Virus record (IMG/VR): IMGVR_UViG_3300038424_000251
Location: 186,001-250,000 of that record
Reading direction: 5' to 3' (one strand)
Length of the DNA stretch: 64,000 nucleotides
The notes below the pieces were generated by a model. It ran no database searches. It saw only the letters and a list, made by a program, of their open reading frames with translations, and had not been told where the DNA came from. This document shows positions 5,540-64,000 of the stretch, piece by piece (positions within the stretch are counted from its first letter, which is position 1; every line of letters begins with the position of its first letter). The position numbers and the translations under genes are program-made.

Positions 5540-5627
5540 AATTAATCATATATACATAGATATTTCGGAAAACGCCTTATTTTATAAGGCTTGACAGTAT
5601 ATAGAAAAAGTGATATAGTGCCCTATA

Positions 5628-5972
5628 ATGAAAAAATATACCATCGTTAGTAGGCGTTCCAATTTCGTTATGTGGCGTGTTCCCATTTGGGAGACATTCA
5701 TAACCGGCAAGAAAACCAAAAAGAATCCAAAAGGCATTTATGCAGGTCATCTTATCACAAAAAATTTACTCACTTTTGACTCATACAAAGAAACCAAAGA
5801 AATTGTAAAATGGTTAGATGATGTTAATTTTATATGTCAACATAAAATTGTAAATGTTGATAAAATTGCTGAAATTATAAAAACTACTAAAGGATTTTAC
5901 CCAAAAGGAAGTTATTATTATTGGAAAAAATATCTTCTTGATGATTCTGTATTTAAAAGAAAAAAGAAATAA
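5628..5972 (+). CDS. hypothetical protein, leaderless cassette
   Basis: ATG 8 nt after -10 TATAGT (5614-19). Confidence 0.65.
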   Translation: MKKYTIVSRRSNFVMWRVPIWETFITGKKTKKNPKGIYAGHLITKNLLTFDSYKETKEIVKWLDDVNFICQHKIVNVDKIAEIIKTTKGFYPKGSYYYWKKYLLDDSVFKRKKK

Positions 5973-5973
5973 C

Positions 5974-6459
5974 ATGATTTACTGGCTCATAGGTCAACCC
6001 GGTTGCGGAAAGAGTACTTTGGCAAAGCTTCTACAAGCAAAAATTGAAAAATGTCTGTATTTTGATGGGGATGACTTGCGTAAAATCTTTGGTAACTCAT
6101 ACTCTCCTAAACATTTTACAAGAGAATGGAGAGAAGAACAAACACGAGCTTTACAACGATTGATTACTTATCTTGTTGACCAAGGATTTAACATAATAAT
6201 TGCTACAGTTAATCCTTATAGAAATGTAAGAGAAGAATTCAAAAATTCAAGAATGGATATGAGGGAAATTTATATTCACAAAACTGATGTAAGAGAAAGA
6301 GAAAATTTTGCTGTTTCTGATTATGAGCCTCCTTTAGAAAACTTTATTGATATAAATACCACGGGTCACACTCCCGAAGAATCAGTAGAAGAAATCGTTC
6401 AAAAAGATATTTCATTGGGCATACTTGAACTTATGAAGAAATATCATGACTATAGATAA
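5974..6459 (+). CDS. P-loop nucleotide/polynucleotide kinase (APS-kinase/NMP-kinase fold)
   Basis: WLIGQPGCGKSTLAKLL Walker A, YFDGDDLR, IIIATVNPY; start moved to ATG 5974. Confidence 0.8.
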   Translation: MIYWLIGQPGCGKSTLAKLLQAKIEKCLYFDGDDLRKIFGNSYSPKHFTREWREEQTRALQRLITYLVDQGFNIIIATVNPYRNVREEFKNSRMDMREIYIHKTDVRERENFAVSDYEPPLENFIDINTTGHTPEESVEEIVQKDISLGILELMKKYHDYR

Positions 6460-7215
6460 AGTAACATCATTAGCTGACCTAGCATTCAAAGCTAAAACTA
6501 ATAAGTATTATAAAAAGTTAGCTATTATTGCAGCTGAATATCTCGGCGGTTATTTTGAACAGAAGACATACGAATATGCTATAAATACTTTATATAGAGT
6601 AGCTCGTTTCAATGACCCAAATTCATGTCTATCAGTAGTCAATGCAATAAATAATCTTAGAAATAGAGTAGAAGAAAACCCTGACCCTGTAGTTGAACGA
6701 CTCAAAAATATAAAAAAAGAAGATATGCCTTACAAAGACAACATATCATTTAATGAACGGATAAACGAAGAATGTGAACGCCGCCAAAGGCGACAATGGG
6801 AACAAATGATGGAAAGAGAATATGAAGAACAACATAGGCGATGGAGGTCTTACGATTGGATTCCCTACTATGACGACCATACGTAAATATGAAAAAAATT
6901 ACTTCATTATTTGACTTCTTCCAAAAAGTAAAGACAGACAAAAGGTATGAAGAAGTAGCACGTTATGCTTATACCTATAATATTGGCACATCTCCTACTC
7001 GTTTTAGATATGTGGATGCTGAAAGGTGGATTAAAGAGTGGATAAAAAATAATGAATCGGATACTTGTAAAGCGATGGTTCTTTATTTAAATGAATGTAT
7101 GGTTAAAATTTACCCATCAGAATACGAAGATTTAGAATTATTGAAAAATTTAGTTGAAGAAGATGATTGTGTTGAAGATGATTGTGTTGAAGGAAGCGAA
7201 GAACCCGAAGCCTAA
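6446..7215 (+). other. two hypothetical ORFs (6446..6886, 6889..7215)
   Basis: ORF track, abutting; the second has a 15-nt tandem duplication (EDDCV x2). Confidence 0.6.
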
Positions 7216-7263
7216 TAGTTAATAAACGAGGCTTGACTTATTATAGAATTATGATAGACTTTT

Positions 7264-8361
7264 GTGATGAAAGTTGACCTACAATATATTGACTTGACGC
7301 AATTCATGGTACATGAGCGTATTTTGAATGGTGAAATGGTCTATTTGGTTCAACCTCAACATATTGGCGCAAAATGGGACCATGACAACAAAATTTTCCG
7401 TTCCTCTCTTTGGGATTCCAATGGTGAGCTTATTTCAGCAGGCTTTTACAAATTTACGAATTGGGGTGAATCGCCTGACGTTTTTCCTTTACCCAATTCT
7501 TTAAAAAATTCCACCATCGTTGAAAAAATTGATGGTTCATTACTCATTGTTTCAAAATGGAAAGGTAAATATATTTTAAGAACTCGTGGCACCGTTGACG
7601 CTACTCAACTTGAAAATGGTCATGAGCTTGAAATTTTTAAGCAAACTATTCTTCCGAATATTATAAACAATGATAATACTTGGAATGTCTCTTATTTGTT
7701 TGAATGGGTATCACCTACTCAAAAAATTATTCTTAATTACGGCGACCAACCTGATTGGTATTTAGTAGGTGTTGTAAAACATAATGATTATTCATTAGTT
7801 CCTCAATCAGAATTGGATGAATACGCTTCTTACAATTTTATGAAGCGTCCTACCACCTATACCTTTACCACCATTGAAGACCTTTTGTTGAATGTTGACC
7901 AATGGAAAGACAAAGAAGGCGTTTGTGTTTATTCCGATGGTGGGCAATCAATTCATAAAATTAAATCTACATGGTATCTTACCCTTCATCACATGAAATC
8001 AGAATTGGCTTCATTTGATAAAGTTATTGATGTATGGTTCAACTTTGGAAAACCCACTTACACTGAATTTTATGATAAAGTGTCCACTCAATTTGACCAT
8101 GAATTGGCAACTCAAATCCGTGGTGATATATCCCGTATTTGTGATGGTTGGAAAGAAGTTTTGAAAATTGAGGAAGGTATGGTTAATTTCGTTAAAAACG
8201 AACTTAGCAAATATCCTACTCGTAAATTACAAGCAGTGGTTACATTTCAATCGTATGGAAAAGGAACAAATCGTTCGTCTTATGTTTTTAAGTTATTGGA
8301 TGGTAAAACATTAAGTGATGAAGATTATAAAAAATTACTTTATCAAGTAACAAAAAATTAG
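7264..8361 (+). CDS. T4 Rnl1 (RnlA)-like RNA ligase
   Basis: FYKFTNWGE, motif I VEKIDGSLLIV, YILRTRG, YLFEWVSP, KEGVCV, KIKSTWYLTLH. Confidence 0.8.
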   Translation: MMKVDLQYIDLTQFMVHERILNGEMVYLVQPQHIGAKWDHDNKIFRSSLWDSNGELISAGFYKFTNWGESPDVFPLPNSLKNSTIVEKIDGSLLIVSKWKGKYILRTRGTVDATQLENGHELEIFKQTILPNIINNDNTWNVSYLFEWVSPTQKIILNYGDQPDWYLVGVVKHNDYSLVPQSELDEYASYNFMKRPTTYTFTTIEDLLLNVDQWKDKEGVCVYSDGGQSIHKIKSTWYLTLHHMKSELASFDKVIDVWFNFGKPTYTEFYDKVSTQFDHELATQIRGDISRICDGWKEVLKIEEGMVNFVKNELSKYPTRKLQAVVTFQSYGKGTNRSSYVFKLLDGKTLSDEDYKKLLYQVTKN

Positions 8362-8374
8362 AACATACAAAATT

Positions 8375-8872
8375 ATGATAATTCTAATCATCATATTATC
8401 CCTAATAATTTTGGCACTACTTGTTGTTATTTATTGCCTGAAAAGTGCCTTTGATTTTGAACGACAAAATGCTGAATATTTTCACAAGGAATATCATAGA
8501 AAGCTGAAAGAAATTCAAAATATGATAGACGCTGGTGCTATTAATTTTTCCAAAAAATGGAAAATTGAAGATTAATCTAATATTGTGCAACATACCCTCA
8601 CATCAATGTTTGCAGGAATGCTTCGCAAGCAAGGATATGATGTAATTGAATACGAATGTTTTGAGATTGTAGAATTCTCAAACTTTGTTTTGGAAGGTAT
8701 GATTCAATTTGACAAAGTAAGGAAAGTCCATCGTGTAAGATGGAAGTGTAAAAAAGGTTATTGTATTTTTGATGTTCCTATGGCTCCCGGCTATTCATCT
8801 TCTGAATTCAAACATGTGGGCGATTTGTTGAATTTCTTACAAAGGCGATTAATATGGAAAAGACAATACTAA
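8375..8872 (+). other. two small hypothetical ORFs (8375..8575 with N-terminal TM helix, 8585..8872)
   Basis: ORF track. Confidence 0.55.
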
Positions 8873-12201: not shown

Positions 12202-14136
12202 ATGGACACTGCAACGTTATCTTTAATCAAAAAGAAACAAGAAGAGTTAGATAATTTAAGAATACAGTTAAAAAAGGATTTCATTGGTCTTGATGATGTT
12301 GTTGACCAAGTTATTGAAAGTATAAAAGTTTGGTATATTTTTCCAGAACTACAAATTAGACCCACCATCCTATGCCTATGGGGGCTTACTGGCGTAGGTA
12401 AAACTGATTTGGTTCGTAAAATGGTATCCTACATTCGGATGCAGGATAGATTTCTTGAAATTGAAATGAATGGCAATGATTCTACATCAATTACTATTCA
12501 AGGAAAAATGGAAGAATCTTCACTTTCCCCAGAAGAACCATGTATTCTTTTCTTGGATGAATTTCAAAAATTTAGAACCATTACAGAACAAGGTGAACAA
12601 ATTCCAGAAAACAGAGCTTATTCAGATGTATGGACATTATTAAGTGATGGCAGGTTTCATGCTGATTTAAGCAAGAAAACTGAACTCCTTAGTGAACTTC
12701 TTTACAGTAAATATTATGCTGATTATGAGCGTGTTTACCATGATGAAAAAGAAGATAAAAAGAAAGAAGCTAAAGAAAGTAAAAGAATATACAAAACTGG
12801 CGTTTCTTTGGCTCGTCGCGTAAAACGTCTTTTTAAATTGGAAGATTCTGTTGAAGAAATCATGAAATATAGTGAGGACCAAATTTGTGACCTATACGAA
12901 AGATTTTCTAAAAACCCTACAATTTTTGAGGGTGAAATATACAAAAAACTGCTTATTATAGTTTCAGGTAATTTGGATGAAGCTTATAAAATTGCAAAGG
13001 ATGTTGACGAAGTTGATTTAGATGCTGATTGGTATCATGAATATAGTAAAAGAATTACCGTTTTGGATATTAAAAACGCACTAACCAAGAGATTTCGTCC
13101 CGAACAAATTGCTCGTTTTGGTAATACTCACATTTTGTATCCTTCGTTAAGTAAAAAGAATTATTATCAAATTATTAAGATGAAATGCAACCAAATTGGT
13201 GATTTAGTTACTTCAACCAAAGGTATTAAAATTCAATTTCATGATTCTGTATTTGAGACAATTTATAAGAATGGTGTATTCCCAACACAAGGCGTTAGAC
13301 CATTGCTTTCAACAATTACCAATATTCTTTCATCTGTATTACCTAATTACATTTATAATTGCCTATTGGATGATGCTACTTTATTGAGAGTAACTTGCCA
13401 CGGTAATAAAATGACTGGTATATTTAAGAGGAAAAAAATCGTTATAGAAATTCCTACCGTGCTGGAATCTCTCCGTGAAAAAATTGATGAAGATTCACGC
13501 CATGTTGTGGCAGTTCACGAATTGGGACACGCAGTTGTTTACACTTTATTATTTAATACTGTTCCTGCACAGATTTGCACGGATTCAATCACATCGTATT
13601 CTAATGGATTTATCCTTCGTCATGCAATGATGGAAAACAAAGAAACTCTTTTAAAAAAATTAACGGTAGGAATGGCTGGAAGAGCAGCAGAAGAAATAGT
13701 ATTTGGTGAAACATTTGCTAGTGCAGGTGCTGCAAAAGATATTGAAAATGCAACTAGCGCAGCTTGGAGTTATGTTGGTCGTTATGGATTTGGCGATTTT
13801 TGTGGCGCCATCACATCTAAAAGTAATGACAATGAATTTGAAATTTTTGACCGTGAAAAAATTGGTCAAATTACTGAATCATTGTTAAAAGAAGCAAAAG
13901 AACAAGCAAAAAGCCTTCTTCATACAAATCTCAAATTTTATCAAACTGCTCTTGGAACACTTATGGAAAAAGGTAAAATTTCTCCGAAAGAATTTGAAGA
14001 AATTGCAATGAATTTTGGTATTTCTGTGAAAGAAGTTAAAAGTGGAGAAAAACTAATGCTTGATTATGAAGAGCTTTCAAAGAAATTTCTTAACTCAAAA
14101 AGACTTTCCAAACCACGCAAAAAACACAACGCTTGA
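12202..14136 (+). CDS. AAA+ ATPase (ClpA/B NBD2-like) fused to peptidase M41 (FtsH protease) domain, no transmembrane segment
   Basis: Walker A GLTGVGKT, Walker B ILFLDEFQK, RFRPEQIARF, GVRPL; zinc motif AVHELGHA, MAGRAAEEIVFG, GAAKDIENAT. Confidence 0.8.
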   Translation: MDTATLSLIKKKQEELDNLRIQLKKDFIGLDDVVDQVIESIKVWYIFPELQIRPTILCLWGLTGVGKTDLVRKMVSYIRMQDRFLEIEMNGNDSTSITIQGKMEESSLSPEEPCILFLDEFQKFRTITEQGEQIPENRAYSDVWTLLSDGRFHADLSKKTELLSELLYSKYYADYERVYHDEKEDKKKEAKESKRIYKTGVSLARRVKRLFKLEDSVEEIMKYSEDQICDLYERFSKNPTIFEGEIYKKLLIIVSGNLDEAYKIAKDVDEVDLDADWYHEYSKRITVLDIKNALTKRFRPEQIARFGNTHILYPSLSKKNYYQIIKMKCNQIGDLVTSTKGIKIQFHDSVFETIYKNGVFPTQGVRPLLSTITNILSSVLPNYIYNCLLDDATLLRVTCHGNKMTGIFKRKKIVIEIPTVLESLREKIDEDSRHVVAVHELGHAVVYTLLFNTVPAQICTDSITSYSNGFILRHAMMENKETLLKKLTVGMAGRAAEEIVFGETFASAGAAKDIENATSAAWSYVGRYGFGDFCGAITSKSNDNEFEIFDREKIGQITESLLKEAKEQAKSLLHTNLKFYQTALGTLMEKGKISPKEFEEIAMNFGISVKEVKSGEKLMLDYEELSKKFLNSKRLSKPRKKHNA

Positions 14137-14169
14137 CTTTTTTTATAGTTGTGGTAGAATTCACTAAAT

Positions 14170-16624: not shown

Positions 16625-17647
16625 ATGAGAATGTTTAATAAAGAAAGACGTTATCCAATTTCAAAAGAAAACGAAATTGAAACATTTAAGAAAGAGCTTG
16701 AATATTATCGCAACTACAATGTGTATAATATTAGGTTATTCGGGTATAGAATCATTAATATCTACAAAAACATAAATGTTCAAGTTGTCATTAGTAAAAA
16801 TTGTAATTATTCTTGCCCATTTTGTATAGAAAACGACCATACTATCAATGAGGAAATTGAATCTCCTATAGGCAAAATTTTTGATTCTATTATTGACCAA
16901 TATACTGGCCAAGGAATTACACCCAGCGTATCAATTACAGGCGGCGAGCCCACTTTATTTCCTGAAAGATTAAGAGAGATTTACCAAATTGCTATTAAAA
17001 GATGGGGCCTCTCGCGTGTCAATATAAATACCAACGGAGTTAACCCTGATATTCTTGAAGAAATGAAAGGTATCAGGGTTAATCTTTCACGTCATCATTA
17101 TTGTGAAACAAAAGCTGACATGATTTTTGGTAAGAAGTCTGATTATGTCATTGGCAGTAATATCACAATGCAATGTGTAATGATGAAAGGTTTTATTGAT
17201 TCCGTTGCTGAAATAAAGAAATATATGGATTTCTTCATAGCAATGAGAGCTGATGGATTTTCTTTCCGTGGAATGTCAAAACTCGACGCCAGCAAAGAAT
17301 ATGTCAGAGAAATTGATTTTAGCACCACTCATGCCATTGACTTCTTTTCTATTGTAAATGAAGTATCAAATGACCCGGCTTTTGAATTTGTTCAACAAAA
17401 AATTGGCGACCATTATTTTTATGAGATTTACAAATATAAAGGGAAACCTGTTCGTTTTACTTATTCCAATTTTGAATTTCTAAGAAAAGTTGAAACCGAA
17501 GAACGAAAAAATGGTAAATCCTACAGTCGTGCTACCATTATTTCTCCATCTGGCAAGGTTTACACGGGTTGGACATACAATATCAATGAATTAACAATAC
17601 CATCATCATATCATTTTTTTAGTGGTGCATCTATTTCCATCGCTTGA
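16625..17647 (+). CDS. radical SAM protein
   Basis: CNYSCPFC (CxxxCxxC), SITGGEPTL, INTNG. Confidence 0.85.
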   Translation: MRMFNKERRYPISKENEIETFKKELEYYRNYNVYNIRLFGYRIINIYKNINVQVVISKNCNYSCPFCIENDHTINEEIESPIGKIFDSIIDQYTGQGITPSVSITGGEPTLFPERLREIYQIAIKRWGLSRVNINTNGVNPDILEEMKGIRVNLSRHHYCETKADMIFGKKSDYVIGSNITMQCVMMKGFIDSVAEIKKYMDFFIAMRADGFSFRGMSKLDASKEYVREIDFSTTHAIDFFSIVNEVSNDPAFEFVQQKIGDHYFYEIYKYKGKPVRFTYSNFEFLRKVETEERKNGKSYSRATIISPSGKVYTGWTYNINELTIPSSYHFFSGASISIA

Positions 17648-17680
17648 CAATCAATATGAAGATGATATAATAACTTCATC

Positions 17681-18395: not shown

Positions 18396-20741
18396 ATGAT
18401 ACCCGTAAAAGATTGTCCCGATGTAGTTCATCAAACCACTCCTATTGCTCGCATTGACATGGGTAAAATGGATGAAGAATCCATTCGTGTGATGTTGGAG
18501 CAATCACGCGATGGATTTTATTCAAACAAGGAATTGGCTCCCATTAGAGAATATTCAACTAATGCACGGGATGCACACGTTGAATCCAATTGCCATAGCA
18601 GACCAATCGAAGTTACATTACCTTCTCAATTGTCTCCCGAACTTCGTATTCGTGATTTTGGCAAAGGTCTTTCATTTGAAAGATTATGTGACGTTTATTT
18701 TCACTATTGGAAAAGCACAAAACGCGGTTCCAATGATACGAATGGTTGTTTGGGTATAGGTAGCAAATCAGCAATGGCTTATTGTGACGCCTACACCGTC
18801 ATTTCAATTTGTAATGGTGAAAAGATTGTTGCTACAGGTCAGAAAAATGGATATGCTGATGTTATTTTCCGTGGTCAAAAAGATAACAGTGAAGTAGATG
18901 GTATAGAAATTGTTATTCCTATTCAGCAAAAGGACATCGCAAAATTCATTCACGAAGCGATGGAATTCTTCAAATATTGGGATATTCGTCCTGTTTTTCA
19001 TAATATTGAAGAAGATACTTTAAAAGAATCATTCAATATTATGGATACCAAGCCTTTCCTTTCGGGGGAAGGTTGGGCAATTCGCCCTTCTGGTTATGGT
19101 AATAGCGAATCAAAAGCTATTATGGGGTTTGTTCCCTATTCTATTGATTGGGAACAGGTTAAGAATAGTATTCCACCTGAAATTAACCAAAAAATTCATG
19201 GTATATTTGATTTTCTCCAAGAAAATCTTACCACACTTTATTTTAGTAATGGCACCTTGTCGTTTACGCCCAACCGTGAATCACTTCAATACAATGAACC
19301 TACGGTAAAAGCTTTAAGTGAGAAACTTGTATCTATTTATGAGAGCCTTCTAAATCTCATTACTGATAAAATTTCCGATGCTCCGAATATTTGGGAAGCG
19401 AAAATTCGTTACAATCGTATTTTTCGAAGAGAATTAGAGGGATTTGACAAAGAATCAATGTATAGCGGCAACCTCAGCACACTTGAAAGAATCTTAAAAG
19501 GCCGTATTCAATGGAAAGGCATTACTATTGAAAATGGCTTATTTGAAGAATTACATGAGTGGGATAAAAACGATGGTAAATTGGACTCTAATCAATACAG
19601 AAGCAGTAGTGAATCTATGCCTGTATTAAATACTTATGTTAAAGACGATGACAGAACAGGCATTAAATCTTGTAGTAGGAGAAGCCGAAGGCGTTGGAGA
19701 AGCTATAGTAATAATCAAATAATCGCTTCACCAAAATCTGTGGTAATTATTCAAGATACTGATAAAAATTCTTTAGCCAAAGGTCTGGCTCGTTGGTTTC
19801 TTTACAAATCCAACAAAGACGTGTCACAGGTTTATGTTCTTAATTTGTCAAATTCAGCTGTTAAGACAGCTTTCTTCAAACATTTCAATTTTGACACGGT
19901 GCCTGTTTCTTATGTGTCACAAAATGAACCGTTAATCAAATCATATTTGAAAAGTATTAGAGCGCCTCGCGGAAGTGGAACTGGTTCTCCCCGTGAATCC
20001 CAACCTCTTTATTGCCCATTTGTGGAAATAACAAATCGGCGAACTGCAAATTATGTTTCTGAACCATCTTGGAATTATGAAAATGTTAATGCCCGTGGAG
20101 TTGAAGGTGGTGGTTTTTATGTAGTTTATGCAAAAAATTTCTTCACCTACGATGGTAAAGACATTGAACACGGTTCAAGTGGATATTTTTGGCAGGCTAT
20201 CTATGACTTAGCTCTAATAGTTGGTGAAAACATACCAAAAGTTTATGGTATTCATCCAAAAACTGCCAACTCTGTTTGGTTCAAAGAAGCGATTGAAGAA
20301 GGTTGTTGGACAAATCTCTTTGATTGGGTGAAGGAAAATATTGATAAATTACCAAAAGATATTATCAAAAAAGTTTCAGCCTATTGTGATATTGAATATA
20401 ATCGTGTAGGAACTATCCCTGCTGAAACTTTGGCTCTCTTACTGGTTGATGGTAACGGAATTGCAGCTAAATATTTCAAGGAAATTGCCGACTTTGGTAA
20501 ATATTGGAATACTAAAAACATTCCTACATTCCTTAATATTCCGGGTTGGAAATATGATGAAAACAACACAAAATATTTTGAGAAACTAAATGAAGAAATG
20601 AAAAAGAAATATCCTCTTTTGTTCAGAGTAGCTCAAACGTGTGTAATAGGCAATTGTGACCAAAATAGTTGTAATACATTAAATTCTGATTTAGCAAAAG
20701 AATTGGCCAATTATATCAACATGGTTGATGTTTATGCTTGA
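18396..20741 (+). CDS. rIIA: rIIA-like protein (N-terminal GHKL/Hsp90-type ATPase)
   Basis: PIREYSTNARDAH, IRDFGKGLS, GCLGIGSKSA, FTPNRESLQY; lies upstream of rIIB-like gene. Confidence 0.8.
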   Translation: MIPVKDCPDVVHQTTPIARIDMGKMDEESIRVMLEQSRDGFYSNKELAPIREYSTNARDAHVESNCHSRPIEVTLPSQLSPELRIRDFGKGLSFERLCDVYFHYWKSTKRGSNDTNGCLGIGSKSAMAYCDAYTVISICNGEKIVATGQKNGYADVIFRGQKDNSEVDGIEIVIPIQQKDIAKFIHEAMEFFKYWDIRPVFHNIEEDTLKESFNIMDTKPFLSGEGWAIRPSGYGNSESKAIMGFVPYSIDWEQVKNSIPPEINQKIHGIFDFLQENLTTLYFSNGTLSFTPNRESLQYNEPTVKALSEKLVSIYESLLNLITDKISDAPNIWEAKIRYNRIFRRELEGFDKESMYSGNLSTLERILKGRIQWKGITIENGLFEELHEWDKNDGKLDSNQYRSSSESMPVLNTYVKDDDRTGIKSCSRRSRRRWRSYSNNQIIASPKSVVIIQDTDKNSLAKGLARWFLYKSNKDVSQVYVLNLSNSAVKTAFFKHFNFDTVPVSYVSQNEPLIKSYLKSIRAPRGSGTGSPRESQPLYCPFVEITNRRTANYVSEPSWNYENVNARGVEGGGFYVVYAKNFFTYDGKDIEHGSSGYFWQAIYDLALIVGENIPKVYGIHPKTANSVWFKEAIEEGCWTNLFDWVKENIDKLPKDIIKKVSAYCDIEYNRVGTIPAETLALLLVDGNGIAAKYFKEIADFGKYWNTKNIPTFLNIPGWKYDENNTKYFEKLNEEMKKKYPLLFRVAQTCVIGNCDQNSCNTLNSDLAKELANYINMVDVYA

Positions 20742-20771
20742 CAATTTATAAAAATGTGATATACTTCCATT

Positions 20772-22428: not shown

Positions 22429-23211
22429 ATGCCAGAAACATCTATTATAAAGATAGGAAGAATTTATTTGATAACAAATCTAATAAACAATAAAAAGTAT
22501 ATTGGAATAACTACACGCACCGTAGAAAAAAGGTTTAAAGAACACATCCGAACATCAAATAATGAAAAATATTCTTTCCTCATAAATAAATCCATTAAAA
22601 AATATGGAAAAGAAAATTTTAAAATTGAATTGGTAAAAGAATTGTATGATACTACTGAAAACGAATTGTTGTTTGAAGAGTCGTTTTACATAAATAAATA
22701 CAACACACTAATTGATAATGGTTGTGGTTATAATTTATTAAAATATGATGATGGTCATCTAATTTTCAGTAAGGATATGAGAAAAAGAATGAGTGAATCT
22801 CATAAAGGAGAAAAAAATTATAATTTTGGAAAACATTATACGGAGGAAGAAAAAATCAAACAATCTTTATCACATATAGGAAAACAAATCGGAAAAGATA
22901 ATCCTTTTTTTGGAAAAACTCACACAAAAGAAACCAAAGAACTAATATCGTCAATTCACAAAGGAAAAATAACATCAAAAGAAAGTAGAAAAAAGATGTC
23001 CATTTCTCAAAAGCTAAGATTTGAAAATGTGAATAATTGTTTTAATATTGATTTCACAACAAGGAAATTTAAGAACATTCTTACAGGCGAAGAATTTGTA
23101 GGACTCAGACGCAATTTTAGGAGAAAATATGACTTGAAAAAATGTAGTGTGAATGCCTTAATAAATGGCCGATTAAAAATTCTTAAAGGATGGATTTTAG
23201 TTGAGGCTTGA
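22429..23211 (+). CDS. free-standing GIY-YIG (Seg-like) homing endonuclease with NUMOD3 repeats
   Basis: GRIYLITNLINNKKYIGIT, RFKEH, E...I, N...GYN; GEKNYNFGKH and GKDNPFFGKTH repeats; ATG at 22429. Confidence 0.9.
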   Translation: MPETSIIKIGRIYLITNLINNKKYIGITTRTVEKRFKEHIRTSNNEKYSFLINKSIKKYGKENFKIELVKELYDTTENELLFEESFYINKYNTLIDNGCGYNLLKYDDGHLIFSKDMRKRMSESHKGEKNYNFGKHYTEEEKIKQSLSHIGKQIGKDNPFFGKTHTKETKELISSIHKGKITSKESRKKMSISQKLRFENVNNCFNIDFTTRKFKNILTGEEFVGLRRNFRRKYDLKKCSVNALINGRLKILKGWILVEA

Positions 23212-23248
23212 CTTCTTATAAAATTGTGGTATTATAAATGATAACACT

Positions 23249-41000: not shown

Positions 41001-41249
41001 GATTCTATAAATAATAGAAAAGGATGGGTTTGGCGAAGTTTATCGTTAACGCTGCGCAAAACGCAGCCAGTTTCATCTTTAACGATAATAATAAGAAATG
41101 ATTTTGAAATGTTTGTATAAACGCCACGGCGCATGGTATTGTGAGATATGGATGCCAATATGGCGAAGAAATTTGAAGAATTGTAGTATCTACCTTCCGG
41201 AGCCCGTAGGTCGCCTCACATAGATATGTTATCAAATGTTTATAGAAAG

Positions 41250-41702
41250 TCAAGCGTTACTGTTATGTTTTACAATATCCACACAAAGATTTATAAAATC
41301 AGGATGTGACATATAGTGTTTAGCAATATTGGCTTCTTTTATGGTCAATCTTATGTTAGAAATATCACTGGTTCCACCATTACGCAAAGGAATAATATGG
41401 TCAGGAGAAACGTTACCACCACTCAATTTACGACCTGTTAATGCGCATATAAGTTTTTGTTGTTTAGCTAATTTCCATATATCCCATCCTGTAATAATTG
41501 ATGTTCTATCTTTTCTCTTTATAGAATAAGCTATTCTTAAACAGGCATGTCGCCAATAATAACGCTTTCTACTTTCATTTACACCGTTTCTTCTTTGAGG
41601 ATTTGTCTTATTTTTCCAATAATTTACTTTCCATTTTTGGCGGTATTGATTGTATTTTTCTGGATTTTCTCTTTTTAATTTTTCAATATAAGTTTCTTTC
41701 AT
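41250..41702 (-). CDS. HNH endonuclease (basic N-terminus), paralog of 60056..60604
   Basis: CALTGRKL...SPDHIIPLRNGGTSDISNIRL...ANIAK; probable ATG at 41702. Confidence 0.85.
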   Translation of the reverse strand: MKETYIEKLKRENPEKYNQYRQKWKVNYWKNKTNPQRRNGVNESRKRYYWRHACLRIAYSIKRKDRTSIITGWDIWKLAKQQKLICALTGRKLSGGNVSPDHIIPLRNGGTSDISNIRLTIKEANIAKHYMSHPDFINLCVDIVKHNSNA

Positions 41703-43885: not shown

Positions 43886-44131
43886 ATGGAAAAAATACCC
43901 GCAATCGTTGTTAAAGTGGTTCCTTCAAAAATAGAGAAGGATGCTTTTAGCGGTAAACGTTATGAAGTAGGCAACTATGTTCTTGTTCAGGAGATTGCGT
44001 CAGGCGCACTTCATACATTTATCAATGGTTCAATAAACGGAGTGAAGCCTGAATTACGAGTGGTTGACACAGGGGGAAACATTACATGGCAAAGGTCTGC
44101 AAGTTACAATCTTCCTTTCTTCAGCGCTTGA
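43886..44131 (+). CDS. hypothetical protein
   Basis: ORF track; stop overlaps next -35 box. Confidence 0.6.
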   Translation: MEKIPAIVVKVVPSKIEKDAFSGKRYEVGNYVLVQEIASGALHTFINGSINGVKPELRVVDTGGNITWQRSASYNLPFFSA

Positions 44132-44260
44132 CTTTTTCTAAAATGGTGGTAACGTTTCGGTGACCGGCCAGTCGGGGGTTCGTTAGCAAACTACCAAAAA
44201 GCTGACATGGGGGATGGGTAAGTTAGACGGTATTGGCTCCGTGGAAAGCCAAACTCTGGT

Positions 44261-50492: not shown

Positions 50493-50684
50493 ATGCCAGA
50501 TAATTTCATAAGAAACCGCGAAGGTAAAATCATTGGTCGCCAAGATGGCAATTGGCTTCGTGATGGTAGTGGAAAGCTTGTTGCTAGACATGATAAGGGT
50601 GATAATCGAACCAGAACGCGTGAAGGTAAAATTGTAGGTTCTGGTGACCAGAGATTGAGGGAATTAGGAAAATCAGAGGCTTGA
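50493..50684 (+). CDS. small repeat protein (R.REGKIIG / RDGSGKLVA / RTREGKIVG)
   Basis: ORF track; three internal beta-hairpin-like repeats. Confidence 0.65.
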   Translation: MPDNFIRNREGKIIGRQDGNWLRDGSGKLVARHDKGDNRTRTREGKIVGSGDQRLRELGKSEA

Positions 50685-50713
50685 CATTTTTTGGTTCTTT
50701 GATACTATTTATT

Positions 50714-52060: not shown

Positions 52061-52064
52061 CAAT

Positions 52065-54039: not shown

Positions 54040-54073
54040 TGTGGATGATAACTTAACAGAATTTTTATAGAAG

Positions 54074-54334
54074 TCAAGCGCTGGAAAGTTGACTATTGAG
54101 TTTTGCAACCAAAGTTCGCTTACGTTTGAATTCTACAAGAATTTGTGACCGAGTGACTTGATAATCTTCCAGTTCACATTTTATTCTCCAGTTAAGTAGA
54201 AATTCCTTTGAAGTAACATACATGCCATTAAATTTAGTCCAGATGCCATAATCTCCATCCTTCAATTCACCGTCATAAATTGAGGAAGTTACATTATCAT
54301 TTTCATCAAAATGATAAATAATTTTACCTGACAT
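54074..54334 (-). CDS. hypothetical protein
   Basis: ORF track; stop overlaps -35 box. Confidence 0.6.
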   Translation of the reverse strand: MSGKIIYHFDENDNVTSSIYDGELKDGDYGIWTKFNGMYVTSKEFLLNWRIKCELEDYQVTRSQILVEFKRKRTLVAKLNSQLSSA

Positions 54335-54453: not shown

Positions 54454-54483
54454 GGGGAAATATTACCATTGTTTTAAGAAATG

Positions 54484-54690
54484 TCAAGCGTTGCTTCTTG
54501 ACTTTGGTGGAGTGCGGTGCTGGATAATCTGATATGCTTGTTTGCAACGCCACGCAAGAGCTGGGTAATTTATATCTTTGCCCCTATTGCAACGAAAATT
54601 ATCAGCAAGACAAACAAACATTTGTTCCAGTTGGTCTGGTTTAAGTTTGAAAATTTTGCTTAAGAATTCGGAAAATTCTTTTTCATCCAT
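54484..54690 (-). CDS. hypothetical protein
   Basis: ORF track; stop overlaps -35 box. Confidence 0.55.
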   Translation of the reverse strand: MDEKEFSEFLSKIFKLKPDQLEQMFVCLADNFRCNRGKDINYPALAWRCKQAYQIIQHRTPPKSRSNA

Positions 54691-55081: not shown

Positions 55082-56608
55082 TGATTTTGGAAATCGGTTA
55101 ATTCTTTAACCAAAGTTGATGGGTCAATCCGTTCGATGAAAATTGCTTTTCTTCCTTTATGAGCAACAATACTGAAATTATGAATTCTAACTCTGCGGAG
55201 AAATGATATAGTATCATCAATTGAGCAATAACGAGTGTAAACTTCTGCTGATTTATTCAGAACCAAAATTTCCAATCTGTTCATGATAATAATTATATCG
55301 GATGTTTAGATTTTGTCAAGCTTTATTGGATAAAACCTTCTCTTAATGCTTTGTAGAAGAAACTGGAAACTTGATAAGGTTTGGGTGCTTTACAAGTGTT
55401 GATTAAATTAAGACGAAATTTAACCCATATTCTTTTCAGTATTTTTGGATTTAATTTAATCATACTGTGGTATCTTTCTTTTTGAAAAGAATTTCCATTT
55501 TTTCGTCCCAATCTATTGACCGTTGAGCAACAGGACGGGGAAGGCAAAGGTGCCCTCTTTCGTCTTGATATATTCCGTTGAAGTGATAACCGTCAAGAAT
55601 GGGAACATGAACAACGTGAACAATGTTTTTTAGAACTTTTGTGACGATACAATTTGCGTAACCATCTGCAACTTGGAATTTGATATGGCGTCCGGGGTTT
55701 AGACCGGGACGGTTTGCCATATCTAAAGTTGCCAGTCGATTTTCCAGTAATGTCAATTCTTCACGCCATTTAATTCCATCACCATAAGAAAGTTTACCGT
55801 GAGTTTCAGCATCGGCCACAATTTGTTTAATGGCTTTATCAATTGTTTGTTTTAAACTCATAACGGTAATTTACTAAAATTTTGTAGAAAGTCAAGCGTT
55901 CTCAAAGGTAAAACCGAATTCAGACATCATTCCCGTAATCATGTAGATTTTCACATCGCGGGGAAGTTTTGTGTCTCGAAGAGCCTGAATTGCGTATTTT
56001 TCACCTTCTCGTAATTGATTTGTTCGGTCAACTACTTGCCAAGGGCGAAGGTCACGGCGAAGATTATTGAGAATGTTGGAAACTTTTCGCCACAAAATCT
56101 TATCATCCTTGACTCTAAGGATTAAAAGTTTGTAATGACGAATAGAGCCAAAAGATTCCAAGTTGGTCATACAACTCTATTTTAGTGTTCAAAAGTAATA
56201 CCATCAATTATGGTAGCCACAAGAATTACAACAACTAACGGCCCAACCCATAATGGAAATGTAATACAAAGAAATACAAATCCAACTAATTTTAGAATGT
56301 TCATGGTATTCTTATACCACACTTTTTATAGAAGTCAAGCCTTAGTCCCGGCCCCAAGGAATATCATCGGTTCCAAAAGTATCAGGATTTCGTTTTTTTC
56401 CACCAACTTTGAGGCTGGTTACTTGAACATTGATAGAATTAGGTGAAGTCTCATTTTTATCACCAACGATAGTCAGACCATCAAATCTCTCAGCTATGGT
56501 TTCCATTCCTTGATTGATCAATCCTTTAATTGAATTTTCGTCCAGAAATCCGCTTTTTTCATCGGAATGAACTATAACTTTTAGAGTGACTTCAAAGGTG
56601 TTTATCAT
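55078..56608 (-). other. run of small hypothetical cassettes (55078..55284, 55460..55861, 55892..56170, 56342..56608)
   Basis: ORF track; each with own minus-strand promoter. Confidence 0.6.
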
Positions 56609-58990: not shown

Positions 58991-59819
58991 GTGAATGTAG
59001 AATTAATGGAACATGAGTTGAATTTACTCAATGGTAAAACCATTGTTATTGTTCGGGATGGATTTGGAACGCAAAGTGATTCATGGGTTGGTCAGTTAAC
59101 GGTATTGCCTGAAAAATATCCTCTTGGTTTTCATTTTCAAAGTACAGATTTTGCAATATATTTCACCGCAGATGATGTTCTTAAACTTGATGACTCAATT
59201 GACAAAATAACTGCAAAAATTATTCGTCTAAAAGGACCAAACGATTATGCCCAAGTCTATCAAATCTCACATTGACCGCCATACCCAAGCTGCATCAGTA
59301 GTAGCTTCTCACAGTTATTTTGTCATTGCTGAGATTTCTAGTAATGAGAACCCCGGTTTACTGGTGGGAACAGAAGTAAGGAAATATAAAGACCCCGAAG
59401 CCGCTCCCAGTCGATTTTGGAATGGATTATATTGGACATCTTTTGTTCTTTGCCCGAATGGTGAAATACGAAAAGTTTGTTGTGATGTTCTGAAACCAAG
59501 GAATACTGATACATACTTTAAACGTCAACAAAAGATTTTTCCTCAAATCGCCGCTTGACATTTTCTAAAAGTTTCGTATATTTAAGCCATTATGAACAAT
59601 ATGGCATTGGAACGAGCCCAGAAATGGTTTACGGAACTTGAAGTCCGAACCGAAGCTCGCCAGAATTGTCTTTTGGTCAATCGTGACGATATCGATAAAC
59701 TATTCGGTATTGGTGTTATTTATGATACTGTTTTGGTGGAACTTAAAACTGGGTTGAATTACAGTCGTTACTATTGGACAAAGAAAGACCGTGAATGGCT
59801 TTATCTTGAAACACTTTAA
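58991..59819 (+). other. three hypothetical ORFs (58991..59275, 59247..59558, 59592..59819)
   Basis: ORF track; promoters at about 58958 and 59555. Confidence 0.6.
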
Positions 59820-60675: not shown

Positions 60676-60780
60676 GTGACCATTAACGTTAAAGGAATCA
60701 TCGCAGGCTCCGGTCCCCTACCCTTCGCTTTCTTCGCTAGTCTGGCTTTCGGTGTCGCCGCCAACCCATTCCCAATTTCT
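60676..60780 (-). ncRNA. ORF-less promoter cassette carrying the 42-nt motif (copy 3)
   Basis: Promoter gcttgacatttcttaaaacaatggtaaaat (60787-60816); motif 60684-60725. Confidence 0.55.
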
Positions 60781-60868
60781 GAAAACATTTTACCATTGTT
60801 TTAAGAAATGTCAAGCGCCACCGCAACGCTTGACTTTCTAAAAGAAATTGATAAAGTGGTATCACAAT

Positions 60869-61366
60869 ATGAGCAACATTTCAACAAGTTATCTGGATGT
60901 CGCATTGGACCCGAAAAAGTCTCACGCGACAATTGACGGAGTAATCAAATTAATTGAATTGTCTAAAATTGAATTTGATACTATTGTTTTTCGGGGAATG
61001 TCGGGTGCTCTTATGGCTCCGATAGTTGCTCATCAACTTGAAAAATTTGTCACCATTTGCAGAAAACCTTCTGATGATTCTCACGCCGGTTGCGGCCGTC
61101 TCGAAGGCCATGTTGGAATGAAAAAATATATCATTTTTGATGATTTTATTTCTTCCGGCAAAACGATTCAATCAATACTGGATACTATTAAAGACCATTA
61201 TGAATTTGAGAATGAAACCGAACCAAACTGTGTTGGTATATTTCTTTACAGGTCGGAACGGTCTATGCCTTTTTCTGGCAAAAATAATAGAGACGATATA
61301 CCTGTTTTTTCACATACCCTTGGCATGGGAAATAAACCAATATTCACTGGCGTTAAAGAGGCTTGA
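60869..61366 (+). CDS. type I phosphoribosyltransferase-fold protein
   Basis: IVFRGMSGALMAPIVA...ICRK...YIIFDDFISSGKTI PRPP-binding loop. Confidence 0.8.
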   Translation: MSNISTSYLDVALDPKKSHATIDGVIKLIELSKIEFDTIVFRGMSGALMAPIVAHQLEKFVTICRKPSDDSHAGCGRLEGHVGMKKYIIFDDFISSGKTIQSILDTIKDHYEFENETEPNCVGIFLYRSERSMPFSGKNNRDDIPVFSHTLGMGNKPIFTGVKEA

Positions 61367-61396
61367 CAGTTTCAACTTTTTTGGTAAATTATTGTT

Positions 61397-62327
61397 ATGA
61401 AAAATCTTTGTGGTAAGACGCGACCAAAGGACAAACCTTACGAAGTATGGCGTTCATTTGATGGAACATGGACGTGGAATGTTCTGAAAAAATGGCAGGC
61501 AGACGATAACAAACCTTATGCACGGTGGTTTTGTAATGTTGTCACTCCCATTTGTCCCAATGGTGAAATGGGCGACGTTTATGTTGCTGAAATCAAAGCC
61601 AATGCCGTGAAAGTGGCTTGACATTTTATAAACATTGTATAAACTTCAATCACAATATGAAAACACACTTTAAGCTTCCGATAACGAAAATGTGTATTGT
61701 TGTGTGGTATCGCAACAATGTAAAACACGAGCAACTGATTGCTACTCCTGCTAACAATGACCGGCTTGTGAATACTATGCTAATGGACCACAAGGTTGGT
61801 TATTCCGAAATTCGTGCTGTTAAACCCGTTGAAGCACAAGGTTTAATTGGTCAACGTTTCTAATAACAATTAACGTTATGAAAATTGAAATTCCTGACAA
61901 ATTGATTGAACGCATTCAACGTCAAGTTGGAATCAGTGGTTACGATGAACCTACTACGGAAAAAGAATTAACAGATTTTATTGTTTCTTCCGTGGAAGAA
62001 AATTTGACAAGGGATTTTGGCCGTGATGAGTGAAGCTTGACATTTCTCAAAACAAATGTAAACTGATTTTACAATATGAAAAAAGTTTACGTTGTAGCAT
62101 GGGAAAGCAGGGACGGTAACGGGGTTGAATGGTATCATACACCCGAAGCTGCTGACAAAGCTTTTCACGAAGAAAAGAAAAATTGTGAAATTTTCCGCAG
62201 TCGTAATTGGGCAGCTTATCGTTTTGATTTTCCAACAATAATGTCATGTCGCCGGATGATTTCCCATGATGTTGAATGTAACTATCTTAACCATTTGATG
62301 TTACCGACAACGATTAAATACCCCTAA
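61397..62327 (+). other. small hypothetical cassettes (61397..61621, about 61657..61863, 62076..62327)
   Basis: ORF track; each with own promoter. Confidence 0.6.
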
Positions 62328-62372: not shown

Positions 62373-62810
62373 ATGACAAACACAATTGAATTAAACAAAA
62401 ATTTCTTCTTCGGTGGTAACGCAACTTTCACTGTTGAATCAGACGTGACTCACGCGTGGCGAACGTATAAAATTCGCCGCTTCAAGAAAACCGAACGGTT
62501 TCATAATCCTTCTTATGGTGTCTTTTTGTTGGCCGGTCCTGACAACGAAAATAGTTACGCGTATATCGGAATGGTTGACAAGGCCACCGGTTTCTTCCGC
62601 CTGACATCCAAAAGCAAACGAAATGAAAATTCCTCCGATGTCATTATCTTTAAGTGGGTTATGCAAGGTGTATTTAACGGAATGACGTTAAAAAATGGAA
62701 CGATTCACCATGAAGGGAAATGTGGCTGCTGTGGCCGCACTCTAACAGTCCCGGAATCAATTCGCCGTGGTATCGGACCAGAATGTTGGTCAAGGATTTA
62801 CGGGGCTTGA
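62373..62810 (+). CDS. phage protein with C-terminal DUF6011-type zinc motif
   Basis: CGCCGRTLTVPESIRRGIGPECW; probable ATG at 62373. Confidence 0.75.
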   Translation: MTNTIELNKNFFFGGNATFTVESDVTHAWRTYKIRRFKKTERFHNPSYGVFLLAGPDNENSYAYIGMVDKATGFFRLTSKSKRNENSSDVIIFKWVMQGVFNGMTLKNGTIHHEGKCGCCGRTLTVPESIRRGIGPECWSRIYGA

Positions 62811-62849
62811 CAGAAACAATTTTTTTGGTAAATTGATATTAAATAAAAT

Positions 62850-63249
62850 TATGGGTAAAATCATTGTTACAAATCCGTTTAATCAAATTGACGAAATGTT
62901 TAAGGATTATGTTCGCCCAGCGGAATATAATCAGCCGTTTGATTACTTAATGGCTGTTTGTGGTCGTATTGATTCACCCGGTCCACGGGATGAACGGTGG
63001 GAATACATTCGTGACGCAGGAATGGGATTGATTGAAAGAGTGTTGAAACGTCAACCGATTGGTGCAGGACCACATTATTTTGTTTTTCCTGACCGTTGGA
63101 TGGTACCCGGAGAAGCAATGGAGTTTGAATGTGCATTGCAGGAAAATCCCGACGCGAAAAAGTTCAAACGTGTTTATGTTGTGACGCATCAACCTTATCT
63201 TGTTAGTGGATGTTTACGAGAACAATGTCGAATTGTTCGGAAGGCTTGA
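62850..63249 (+). CDS. hypothetical protein
   Basis: Downstream part of track ORF 62767..63249 (MGKIIVTNP...); stop overlaps -35 box. Confidence 0.6.
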
Positions 63250-63284
63250 CATTTCTAAAAAGAAATATAAACTACCATCACAAT

Positions 63285-63593
63285 ATGATTAACGTCACTC
63301 TTGAAACGCCCGAATTCAAATCATGGATGCAGGGCATCATCGATAAAAACAGGGCCTACATGGCCGCAAGTTTTCCATCATTGGATGTGCCCACAATAAC
63401 GGCTACCGAAGGCAGTCGATATATTCGTGTCATGCGAGACAATTCCGCTCATGCTTTCATTGACCGCACCAACGGCGACGTGCTTAAACCGGCATCATGG
63501 AAAGCACCCGCCAAACACGCAAGAGGCAACATTTTTGATACTTTTAACGGATTGGGCAGCATGGGACCTTATGGACCGGCGTATCTTCGTTGA
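63285..63593 (+). CDS. conserved phage hypothetical protein
   Basis: AHAFIDRTNGDVLKPASWKAPAKHARGNIFD, a motif common in large phages. Confidence 0.7.
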   Translation: MINVTLETPEFKSWMQGIIDKNRAYMAASFPSLDVPTITATEGSRYIRVMRDNSAHAFIDRTNGDVLKPASWKAPAKHARGNIFDTFNGLGSMGPYGPAYLR

Positions 63594-63637
63594 AAGACGA
63601 AGGCTTGACATTTCTTAAAACAATGGTAAAATTTTCT

Positions 63638-63720
63638 TACAATAAAGTTTGAGGCCGACTGAAAAGCGCCAAGAGTAAGGGACCAGAGAGTGCGTTGATT
63701 ACTTTATCGTTAAAAAGTGA
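63638..63720 (+). ncRNA. ORF-less promoter cassette carrying the 42-nt motif (copy 4)
   Basis: Promoter gcttgacatttcttaaaacaatggtaaaat (63603-63632); motif 63671-63712. Confidence 0.55.
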
Positions 63721-63762
63721 CGCTTGACATTTTCTAAAACTAATATAAATTGTTACTACAAT

Positions 63763-63951
63763 ATGAAAAAACACAAATATTTTGTTCTCGTTGAGGAATC
63801 TGAGTCAATTCCTTCTCCCAAAATTTACGAAATTACAAGCAACGTTCCTCTTATAGAAGAACAAATTGAAAACGTCTTAGTTGATAACAACATTTCTTTT
63901 GTTGACAGCACTTTTCAAATTGTTGACGCCCCAATAAAAATTGAGGCTTGA
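63763..63951 (+). CDS. hypothetical protein
   Basis: ATG at 63763 after promoter 63724; stop overlaps next -35 box. Confidence 0.6.
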   Translation: MKKHKYFVLVEESESIPSPKIYEITSNVPLIEEQIENVLVDNNISFVDSTFQIVDAPIKIEA

Positions 63952-64000
63952 CATTTCTTAAAAGTAATATAAACTACCGGCACGATATGACAAAAACATA

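What the first reader, a model, noticed from the sequence alone, without database searches (positions are those of the whole stretch)
5589..63990. Gene ends are welded to the next promoter: 16 ORFs stop at the TGA inside GCTTGAC, so their proteins end in Ala
Seen: GCT-TGA-C forms both the last codon plus stop of the upstream gene and the -35 box of the next cassette. This occurs for ORFs ending at 14136, 17647, 20741, 23211, 44131, 50684, 59558, 61366, 61621, 62810, 63249 and 63951 (+), and 41250, 54074, 54484 and 55892 (-). C-termini include KHNA, SISIA, VDVYA, LVEA, QIAA, VKEA, VKVA, IYGA and KIEA. Established: T4-type phages such as RB49 shuffle small genes by recombination between repeated early-promoter elements (PeSLs). 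Inference: GCTTGAC is the crossover junction of an integron-like but recombinase-free cassette array in which incoming genes are trimmed or extended to the promoter's TGA. A side effect could be C-terminal Ala degrons.
Basis: partly seen in the sequence, partly recalled or inferred. Interest (0 to 1): 0.65.

Follow-up and report, generated by a model that had tools for sequence, protein, structure and literature searches.

The report
Gene stops built into next promoter
In this 365-kb T4-related phage from a metagenome, about a quarter of the roughly 100 early-type promoters also supply the stop codon of the gene in front. The pattern is real and non-random, and extreme gene packing explains it better than a dedicated cassette-swapping junction.

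Summary
GCTTGAC occurs 59 times in the window, against 4.7 expected. It is the extended -35 element of a sigma70-like promoter: RAS-GC-TTGACW, a 16-nt spacer, then TGn-TAnnnT.

Fifteen of the 16 listed ORFs are credible genes ending GCT-TGA inside that element. One, 54484-54690(-), scores as non-coding.

The overlap exceeds a frame lottery. Of upstream ORFs still open at the motif, 15 of 17 in the window and 26 of 28 in the genome stop at this TGA, where one third is expected. A second peak lies at -4. The same pattern appears in two relatives at about 58-67% protein identity.

The terminal Ala arises because GC is a promoter base pair, equally conserved where nothing is coding.

Ortholog comparisons show the weld is labile and local. 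The same gene-promoter pair sits in different registers, and some G0 proteins carry 10-13 extra residues running up to the TGA.

Cassette indels between relatives are only sometimes bounded by promoters, and promoters show no concerted evolution. My reading is therefore stop-codon capture under compaction, with selection against translating across the promoter. Promoter-mediated shuffling of the PeSL kind remains possible for a few cassettes and for homing endonuclease genes, but it is not shown.

The parts
5589..63975 (.). Array of 59 GCTTGAC promoters (41 on +, 18 on -). Consensus: RAS-GC-TTGACW, 16-nt AT-rich spacer, TGn-TAnnnT. The next ATG most often lies 36 nt after the G.
12202..14137 (+). 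FtsH-like AAA/M41 protease gene (644 aa) ending GCT-TGA in the promoter at 14131. It carries a 13-residue tail beyond the end of its G2 ortholog.
16625..17648 (+). Radical SAM gene (340 aa) welded at 17642. The G1 ortholog reads through the same promoter in another frame and stops at +31.
18396..20742 (+). 781-aa gene welded at 20736. The G2 ortholog ends with the same DVYA residues but with GCT-TAA and no promoter.
22429..23212 (+). GIY-YIG/NUMOD3 homing endonuclease gene (260 aa) welded at 23206. All copies in relatives are welded as well.
41249..41702 (-). HNH endonuclease gene (150 aa) welded at the minus-strand promoter 41249-41255.
43886..44132 (+). 81-aa gene welded at 44126.
50493..50685 (+). 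63-aa gene welded at 50679. The G2 ortholog stops at -7 before its promoter.
54073..54334 (-). 86-aa gene welded at 54073-54079. The weld is conserved in G1.
54483..54690 (-). 68-codon ORF ending in the promoter at 54483-54489. Its coding score is about 1, so it is a doubtful gene.
55891..56161 (-). 89-aa gene welded at 55891-55897. The G1 ortholog ends one codon earlier with TAA and has no promoter.
59247..59559 (+). 103-aa gene welded at 59553. The weld is conserved in G1.
60869..61367 (+). 165-aa phosphoribosyltransferase-like gene welded at 61361.
61397..61622 (+). 74-aa gene welded at 61616.
62373..62811 (+). 145-aa DUF6011 gene welded at 62805. The G1 ortholog keeps the terminal GA residues but stops at TAG, at -4.
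62851..63250 (+). 132-aa cassette welded at 63244. In G1 it is translocated and inverted, with homology running from its own -10 region to about +19 of the next promoter.
63763..63952 (+). 62-aa gene welded at 63946.
28204..28214 (+). Example of the second class, with the stop TGA at -4 directly before S-GCTTGAC. Other window cases are at the motifs 38956, 42696, 47066, 47597, 55321(-), 56340(-), 57336(-) and 62035.

Best explanation
The weld is stop-codon capture by a promoter in a tightly packed genome.

Shown: the early region carries about 100 copies of one promoter. Its conserved part runs from -3 to +29 relative to the G of GCTTGAC. It holds a complete TGA in one reading frame, and two thirds of a stop (the RA of T-R-A at -4) in a second frame.

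Inferred: small deletions, frameshifts or loss of the native stop push a gene end up against the promoter. The ORF then ends at the first stop the promoter offers, which is the -35 TGA (adding Ala from the conserved GC) or the -4 position. ORFs that would run on through the spacer, the -10 element and the next start codon are removed by selection. Likely costs are longer, hydrophobic tails, overlap with the next start, and double constraint on promoter bases.

The result is a floor state in which exactly 30 nt separate the stop from the next ATG. That ATG sits at the predicted transcription start, so the downstream mRNA is predicted to be leaderless. Recombination is not needed to make the weld.
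For: - The GC and the RAS upstream of TTGAC are promoter bases. GC is present in 129-133 of 142 promoters whose upstream side is non-coding, the same proportion as in coding context. Conservation starts sharply at -3.
- Stop positions peak at +3 and -4 in three diverged phages. At unconstrained upstream positions the three frames are about equal.
- Reading beyond the -35 is about four-fold depleted against a frame lottery (14 of 102 against 56% expected), while +3 and -4 are enriched.
- Orthologs keep the same gene-promoter adjacency in different registers. The FtsH-like and 696-aa proteins have 13- and 10-residue tails reaching the TGA, where the G2 orthologs stop earlier.
- The genome is compact. 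Promoterless co-directional junctions have a median gap of 10 nt and a quarter of them overlap. Promoter junctions have a hard minimum of 30 nt, and 30 of 74 lie within 30-45 nt.
- TGA is an ordinary stop elsewhere (98 of 478 non-welded genes), and C-terminal Ala is 3.8% in non-welded genes.
Against: - Two cases fit a junction placed exactly at the gene end better than a drifting register. The 781-aa protein ends DVYA both in G0 (welded) and in G2 (GCT-TAA, no promoter). An 86/84-aa pair has its TGA at the same codon with and without a promoter.
- Homing endonuclease copies are welded in four different contexts.
- The selective cost of reading through the promoter is inferred, not measured.
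- Transcription starts are predicted from spacing only.
- Events are not all independent. At least four welds are shared by orthologs.
Confidence: 0.6

Rival explanations
1. The promoter acts as a PeSL-like recombination site, cassettes are exchanged by crossovers at GCTTGAC, and the weld is the scar of that exchange, with incoming genes trimmed or extended to the TGA.
For: - Four insertions between relatives are exactly promoter-gene-promoter units.
- The 132-aa cassette at 62851-63249 has moved and inverted in G1. Its homology starts near its own -10 and ends about 19 nt into the next promoter.
- GIY-YIG and HNH endonuclease genes are welded to promoters in several unrelated contexts.
- The 781-aa gene has the same terminal GCT with and without a promoter.
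- The phage belongs to the T4 superfamily, in which PeSL shuffling was described (PMC2839356, PMC4122927).
Against: - In moved units the ORF end and the -35 stay together, so the crossover is not at GCTTGAC.
- Most simple indels are not promoter-bounded, and about eight involve no promoter.
- Synteny breaks are not enriched for promoters (odds ratios 1.5-2.4, p 0.13 or higher).
- There is no concerted evolution of promoters.
- Orthologous pairs differ by register, not by partner.
- Five near-identical assemblies show no cassette polymorphism.
- Homologous exchange between two promoters would not trim or extend anything.
Confidence: 0.17
2. The stop inside the -35 is positively selected for expression. 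The proposed benefit is that ribosomes on read-through transcripts terminate 30 nt before the next AUG. Either they could then re-initiate on an ORF that has no Shine-Dalgarno sequence, or translation would not interfere with the downstream start.
For: - There is no Shine-Dalgarno signal anywhere in the genome.
- The ATG lies at a fixed +36, in the same frame as the welded stop.
- There is no excess of terminators between cassettes, so read-through transcripts are likely.
- ORFs running over the next start are strongly depleted.
Against: - The weld is evolutionarily labile. Eleven of 19 orthologs of welded genes have no adjacent promoter, and five have another register.
- Stops at -4, -7 and further upstream are also common.
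- A stop at +13 would lie closer to the next AUG, yet it is rare.
- There are no expression data.
Confidence: 0.15
3. The overlaps are chance or an artefact of ORF calling. Any TTGAC holds a TGA, and an AT-rich genome has many short ORFs.
For: One of the 16 ORFs, and one further candidate, score as non-coding.
Against: - Fifteen have coding scores of 15-400, and 11 have homologues in relatives.
- The frame tests give p=4.5e-6 for the window and 7e-11 for the genome.
- The pattern is replicated in two diverged genomes.
Confidence: 0.03

Closest known systems
PeSLs (promoter-early stem-loops) of T4-type phages RB49, phi1, nt-1 and PST (PMC2839356, PMC4122927)
   Same: Both are many copies of a strong sigma70-like early promoter flanking small, mostly orphan genes in plastic regions of a T4-superfamily genome. 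In both, the upstream stop codon lies next to the element, and some gene-content differences are promoter-to-promoter units.
   Different: - No stem-loop or terminator component here.
- No AT-rich tract upstream of the -35. Instead there is a conserved RAS-GC.
- The stop lies inside the -35 rather than upstream of it.
- The ATG is at the predicted transcription start.
- Breakpoints could not be mapped to the element, and most indels are not bounded by it.
Stop/start overlaps of compact prokaryotic and phage genomes (ATGA, TAATG)
   Same: In both, one stretch of DNA serves two signals, and the arrangement arises when intergenic DNA shrinks to its floor. Here a quarter of the promoterless junctions overlap in this way.
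   Different: Here the second signal is a promoter -35 hexamer rather than a start codon. This fixes the last codon (GCT, Ala) and biases the one before it towards N, K, E or D.
Integron cassette arrays
   Same: Both are a linear series of small single-gene units separated by a repeated sequence.
   Different: There is no tyrosine recombinase and no attC-like imperfect inverted repeat. Every unit carries its own promoter, whereas integron cassettes are promoterless.
Free-standing homing endonuclease genes of T4 (seg and mob genes)
   Same: GIY-YIG/NUMOD3 and HNH genes sit between unrelated genes at positions that vary among relatives.
   Different: Here each copy ends in the -35 of the next gene's promoter. 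I know of no description of this for seg or mob genes (from my own knowledge, not tested).
Leaderless mRNAs (for example lambda cI from PRM)
   Same: The start codon lies 6 nt after the -10 hexamer, where transcription is expected to begin.
   Different: Here this is predicted for dozens of genes in one phage, and it is not verified by any 5'-end data.

Membership tests
PeSL regulatory cassettes | Repeated sigma70-like early promoter concentrated in plastic regions | tested here: met
   There are 95 GCTTGAC-N17-TAnnnT sites, almost all between 120 and 278 kb, and none in the reversed-sequence control.
PeSL regulatory cassettes | Adjacent stable stem-loop acting as a terminator | tested here: not met
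   Terminator-like sites number 19 against 16.7 +/- 4.4 in shuffles. There is no conserved sequence outside -3..+29 and the ATG, and a 30-nt junction leaves no room.
PeSL regulatory cassettes | AT-rich tract upstream of the -35 holding the upstream stop codon | tested here: not met
   Positions -30..-4 have background composition, and -3..+1 are RAS-GC.
PeSL regulatory cassettes | Indel and replacement breakpoints between relatives map inside the element | tested here: inconclusive
   Only relatives at 58-67% protein identity, or fully identical ones, were found. Four insertions and one translocation fit the feature, but most do not.
PeSL regulatory cassettes | Excised mini-circles formed between flanking elements | not testable with these tools
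   This needs inverse PCR or reads from infected cells.
Integron | Tyrosine recombinase (IntI) | tested here: not met
   PF00589 has no match in the 365-kb record, while the control rings in 14 of 14 genomes.
Integron | Promoterless cassettes expressed from one common promoter | tested here: not met
   Cassettes are each preceded by their own promoter.
T4 superfamily (context for the PeSL comparison) | gp23-type major capsid protein and gp20-type portal | tested here: met
   PF07068 gives E=1.3e-59 and PF07230 gives E=3.5e-69. The nearest capsids are in an uncultured 484-kb phage and in Microcystis, Flavobacterium and Rhodothermus phages.
T4 middle (MotA/AsiA) promoters | MotA and AsiA proteins, with a MotA box replacing the -35 | tested here: inconclusive
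   PF09114 and PF09010 gave no match, but those controls rang nowhere, so absence is not shown. The TTGAC lies at canonical -35 spacing.
Leaderless mRNA | Transcript 5' end at the A of the start codon | not testable with these tools
   Only the spacing is known. The ATG is at +36 in 26 of 95, 18 of 63 and 41 of 113 promoters, and no RNA run was listed.

The most novel reading that the evidence does not exclude
The 33-nt promoter is a self-sufficient docking module, in effect a stem-loop-free counterpart of PeSLs. Any ORF placed between two copies would be transcribed as a leaderless mRNA and terminated by the next -35. Under this reading, the short promoter homology is what lets cassettes and the GIY-YIG and HNH homing endonuclease genes move to new sites, which would explain why endonuclease copies are welded to promoters in four different contexts.
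Probability: 0.18. Interest if true: 0.65.

Novelty: new variant of a known kind. Interest (0 to 1): 0.4.

Why it matters
The finding shows how far signal overlap can go in a phage. One 33-nt element acts as the promoter, as the stop codon of the upstream gene and, by prediction, as the entire 5' end of the next message. It thereby fixes the last residue of about 30 proteins as Ala.

It gives a clean natural data set on which frames tolerate a promoter inside a coding end. It also defines an unusual extended -35 (RAS-GC-TTGAC) shared by a lineage of uncultured T4-related phages, of which the one complete genome is 365 kb. Finally, it sets a concrete and testable limit on how much of the gene shuffling in such genomes can be credited to promoter repeats. 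For annotation, it warns that short C-terminal tails and terminal Ala residues in these phages are by-products of promoter sequence.

Tried and rejected
- Alternative genetic code (TGA read as sense). Rejected: table 11 gives 91% coding density and 102 ORFs of 300 aa or more, and TGA ends 98 non-welded genes.
- C-terminal Ala degron. Rejected: the penultimate residues are polar, and AA occurs in 2 of 63 welded proteins.
- Search for closer relatives to map breakpoints. Two IMG/VR scans and one metagenome scan returned only identical contigs or the two distant lineages G1 and G2.
- Junction-by-junction Fisher tests of promoter against synteny break. Too few conserved junctions (14-17), and not significant.
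- Expression data. No RNA run was listed.
- Rfam. Only four tRNAs were found.
- Phage sigma factor, MotA, AsiA and integrase. There were no convincing matches.
- The same promoter in the nearest capsid relatives. It is absent from Flavobacterium phage immuto and from uncultured phage LR756508.
- Literature search for stop-in--35 overlaps or leaderless genes in jumbo phages. Nothing directly relevant turned up.
- My first gene call missed a few promoter-proximal ORFs, for example 46864-47064. I re-ran it with a bonus for promoter-proximal starts.


Full report
Context. The window is bases 186,001-250,000 of a 365,299-bp IMG/VR virus record that CheckV rates complete. The record has a gp23-type capsid gene and a gp20-type portal gene. 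Its nearest capsid relatives are an uncultured 484-kb phage and phages of Microcystis, Flavobacterium and Rhodothermus. No cultured phage matches at the DNA level. It is therefore a distant, uncultured member of the T4 superfamily, and the host is unknown.

The motif. GCTTGAC occurs 59 times in the window against 4.7 expected. Genome-wide there are 115 copies, nearly all between 120 and 278 kb. Aligning the 95 copies that are followed by TAnnnT gives a sharp logo. It reads R-A-S at -3..-1, then GC, TTGAC, W, a 16-nt AT-rich spacer, TG at the extended -10 position, and TAnnnT at +24..+29. Nothing is conserved upstream of -3.

A weight matrix built without the GC finds 93 strong sites, of which 81 carry GC, and none in the reversed-sequence control. 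GC and RAS are as conserved where the upstream side is non-coding (129-133 of 142) as where it is coding. They are therefore promoter bases, not codon relics.

The next ATG lies at +36 in 26 of 95 promoters, and at +39 or +41 in most of the others. Position +36 is six bases after the -10 hexamer, where a sigma70-type polymerase is expected to start, so these messages are predicted to be leaderless. The genome shows no Shine-Dalgarno signal at all. No sigma70, MotA or AsiA homologue was detected, although the MotA and AsiA controls rang nowhere. Terminator-like hairpins are not enriched.

The claimed overlaps. All 16 ORF ends are present, and the quoted C-termini are right. Fifteen are credible genes. 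They include an FtsH-like protease, a radical SAM enzyme, a 781-aa protein, a GIY-YIG/NUMOD3 homing endonuclease, an HNH endonuclease, a DUF6011 protein and a phosphoribosyltransferase-like protein. ORF 54484-54690(-) has a coding score near 1 and lies beside a repeated non-coding element, so I regard it as doubtful.

Is it more than chance? I called genes with a hexamer model trained on the genome's long ORFs. I then measured where the co-directional upstream gene stops relative to the G of the motif.

- In the window, 17 genes are still open at -1 and 15 of them stop at +3 (binomial against 1/3, p=4.5e-6). In the genome the figures are 26 of 28 (p=7e-11).
- A second peak lies at -4. It is formed by a T followed by the conserved R-A.
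- At unconstrained upstream positions the three frames are about equally used.
- The same two peaks occur in two related phages: G1 (63-kb contig, about 67% protein identity) and G2 (215-kb contig, about 58%).
- Pooling the three genomes, a frame lottery run on real promoter sequences predicts that 56% of 102 nearby gene ends would read past the -35. Only 14 do (p=5e-19). Ends at +3 number 53 against 34 expected, and ends at -4 number 28 against 7.6 expected.

The overlap is thus real and non-random. The strongest signal is avoidance of translation through the promoter.

How the weld evolves. Reciprocal-best-hit orthologs among the three genomes show that it is labile. Of 19 pairs in which the gene listed first is welded, three are welded in the partner too, five have the promoter in another register, and eleven have no adjacent promoter.

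Examples of register changes:
- The FtsH-like gene is at +3 here and at -10 in G2, with 13 extra residues here.
- The 696-aa gene has ten extra residues here.
- The radical SAM gene is at +3 here. In G1 it reads through the same promoter and stops at +31.
- The DUF6011 gene is at +3 here and at -4 in G1, where it ends GCG-TAG-G before the motif.
- A 114-aa gene is at +3 here and at +13 in G2, where it ends in the residues LDFI.

These are small local changes at a gene-promoter junction that has otherwise stayed together.

Two cases point the other way. The 781-aa protein ends DVYA both here and in G2, where GCT is followed by TAA and no promoter. An 86/84-aa pair has its TGA at the same codon with and without a promoter.

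Compaction. Promoterless co-directional junctions have a median gap of 10 nt, and a quarter of them overlap. Promoter junctions never fall below 30 nt, which is the distance from a stop at +3 to an ATG at +36, and 30 of 74 lie within 30-45 nt. The weld is the tightest packing this promoter allows.

Test of the recombination reading. PeSLs are defined by a sigma70-like promoter, a stem-loop terminator, an AT-rich upstream tract, breakpoints inside the element, and mini-circles (PMC2839356, PMC4122927). Only the first of these is met here.

- Among 33 simple insertion comparisons between relatives (some the same event seen from both sides), four have promoters on both sides. About eight involve no promoter, several are promoter-led blocks at promoterless junctions, and five are promoterless genes inserted upstream of a promoter.
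- Promoters are not significantly enriched at synteny breaks, though few conserved junctions exist.
- At variable promoter positions, orthologous promoters are 55% identical, neighbours within 3 kb 48%, and distant ones 45%. Promoters are therefore inherited with their genes rather than homogenised.
- Near-identical assemblies from other samples match over their fetched stretches at 99.97-100% identity, with a single gap. In the 189-kb assembly every promoter keeps its spacing, with cumulative shifts of only 1, 3 and 9 nt.

In favour of some promoter-linked mobility, the 132-aa cassette at 62851-63249 is translocated and inverted in G1. It retains 83% nucleotide identity, running from about its own -10 region to about +19 of the next promoter. 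The GIY-YIG gene is welded to a promoter in G0, in two G1 copies, and as a 49-codon remnant in G2, in four different contexts. In both cases the ORF end and the -35 move together, so GCTTGAC is inside the unit and not at its edge.

Conclusion. The most likely mechanism is stop capture under compaction, with selection against reading through the promoter (confidence about 0.6). Promoter-mediated shuffling may contribute to gene turnover, but it is neither required for the weld nor shown by the data. The Ala-degron idea is not supported.

Limits.
- Gene calls are my own.
- Transcription starts are predicted only; no RNA run was listed.
- The relatives are too distant for base-level breakpoints.
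- Several welds are shared by descent, so the counts overstate the number of independent events.

Noticed in passing
window-wide; for example the promoters at 20736, 26405, 28208, 38956, 47066, 55897(-) and 61361: The start codon sits exactly 36 nt after the G of GCTTGAC, six bases after the -10 hexamer, in 26 of 95 promoters here and in 18 of 63 and 41 of 113 in two relatives. A second class has its ATG at +41, preceded by CACAAT. Dozens of early genes are therefore predicted to be leaderless or nearly so, and the genome has no Shine-Dalgarno signal.
   Followed up: partly
window 44318-44360, 54382-54424 and 60682-60724 (transcribed on the minus strand from the promoters at 44417, 54489 and 60816): There are three copies of a conserved element of about 43 nt, with a GGGGACCGGAG core, each directly downstream of a promoter that has no ATG at +36. 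They are candidate promoter-driven small RNAs without an Rfam match. The promoters at 41255(-), 44126(+), 50679(+) and 63603(+) are likewise followed by GC-rich sequence rather than by an ORF.
   Followed up: partly
window 22429-23211; L011 7652-8428 and 12884-13468; L013 9786-9935: A GIY-YIG/NUMOD3 homing endonuclease family varies in copy number and position among the three phages. Every copy, including a 49-codon C-terminal remnant, ends in the -35 of the next promoter. A window HNH gene (41250-41702, minus strand) and a distant (30% identical) G1 homologue at another locus both end ...SNA at a promoter.
   Followed up: partly
window 22322-22428: A conserved non-coding stretch of about 100 nt lies between the 336-aa gene and the endonuclease gene. 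It ends in a GC-rich hairpin followed by a T-run, which looks like a terminator, and it is also present before the G1 copy.
   Followed up: no
window 41834-41871, 46081-46162, 58940-58961 and 60810-60834: Back-to-back divergent promoter pairs are found here. In two of them the two -35 regions lie 9-12 nt apart and form a near-perfect palindrome of GTCAAGCG...CGCTTGAC type.
   Followed up: no
window 49500-52143: Four tRNA genes (Arg-TCT, Met, Gly-TCC, Glu-TTC) sit inside the promoter-dense region.
   Followed up: no
window 12202-14136 and 16625-17647: The phage encodes an FtsH-like AAA/M41 protease and a radical SAM enzyme in its early region. Weak FtsH-like matches occur in PA5oct-type Pseudomonas jumbo phages.
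   Followed up: no
G000 254,000-270,000, compared with the identical assemblies: The only differences between this record and the near-identical assemblies checked are cumulative shifts of 1, 3 and 9 nt in promoter spacing, a single gap and a single mismatch. This indicates a very homogeneous population across samples.
   Followed up: partly
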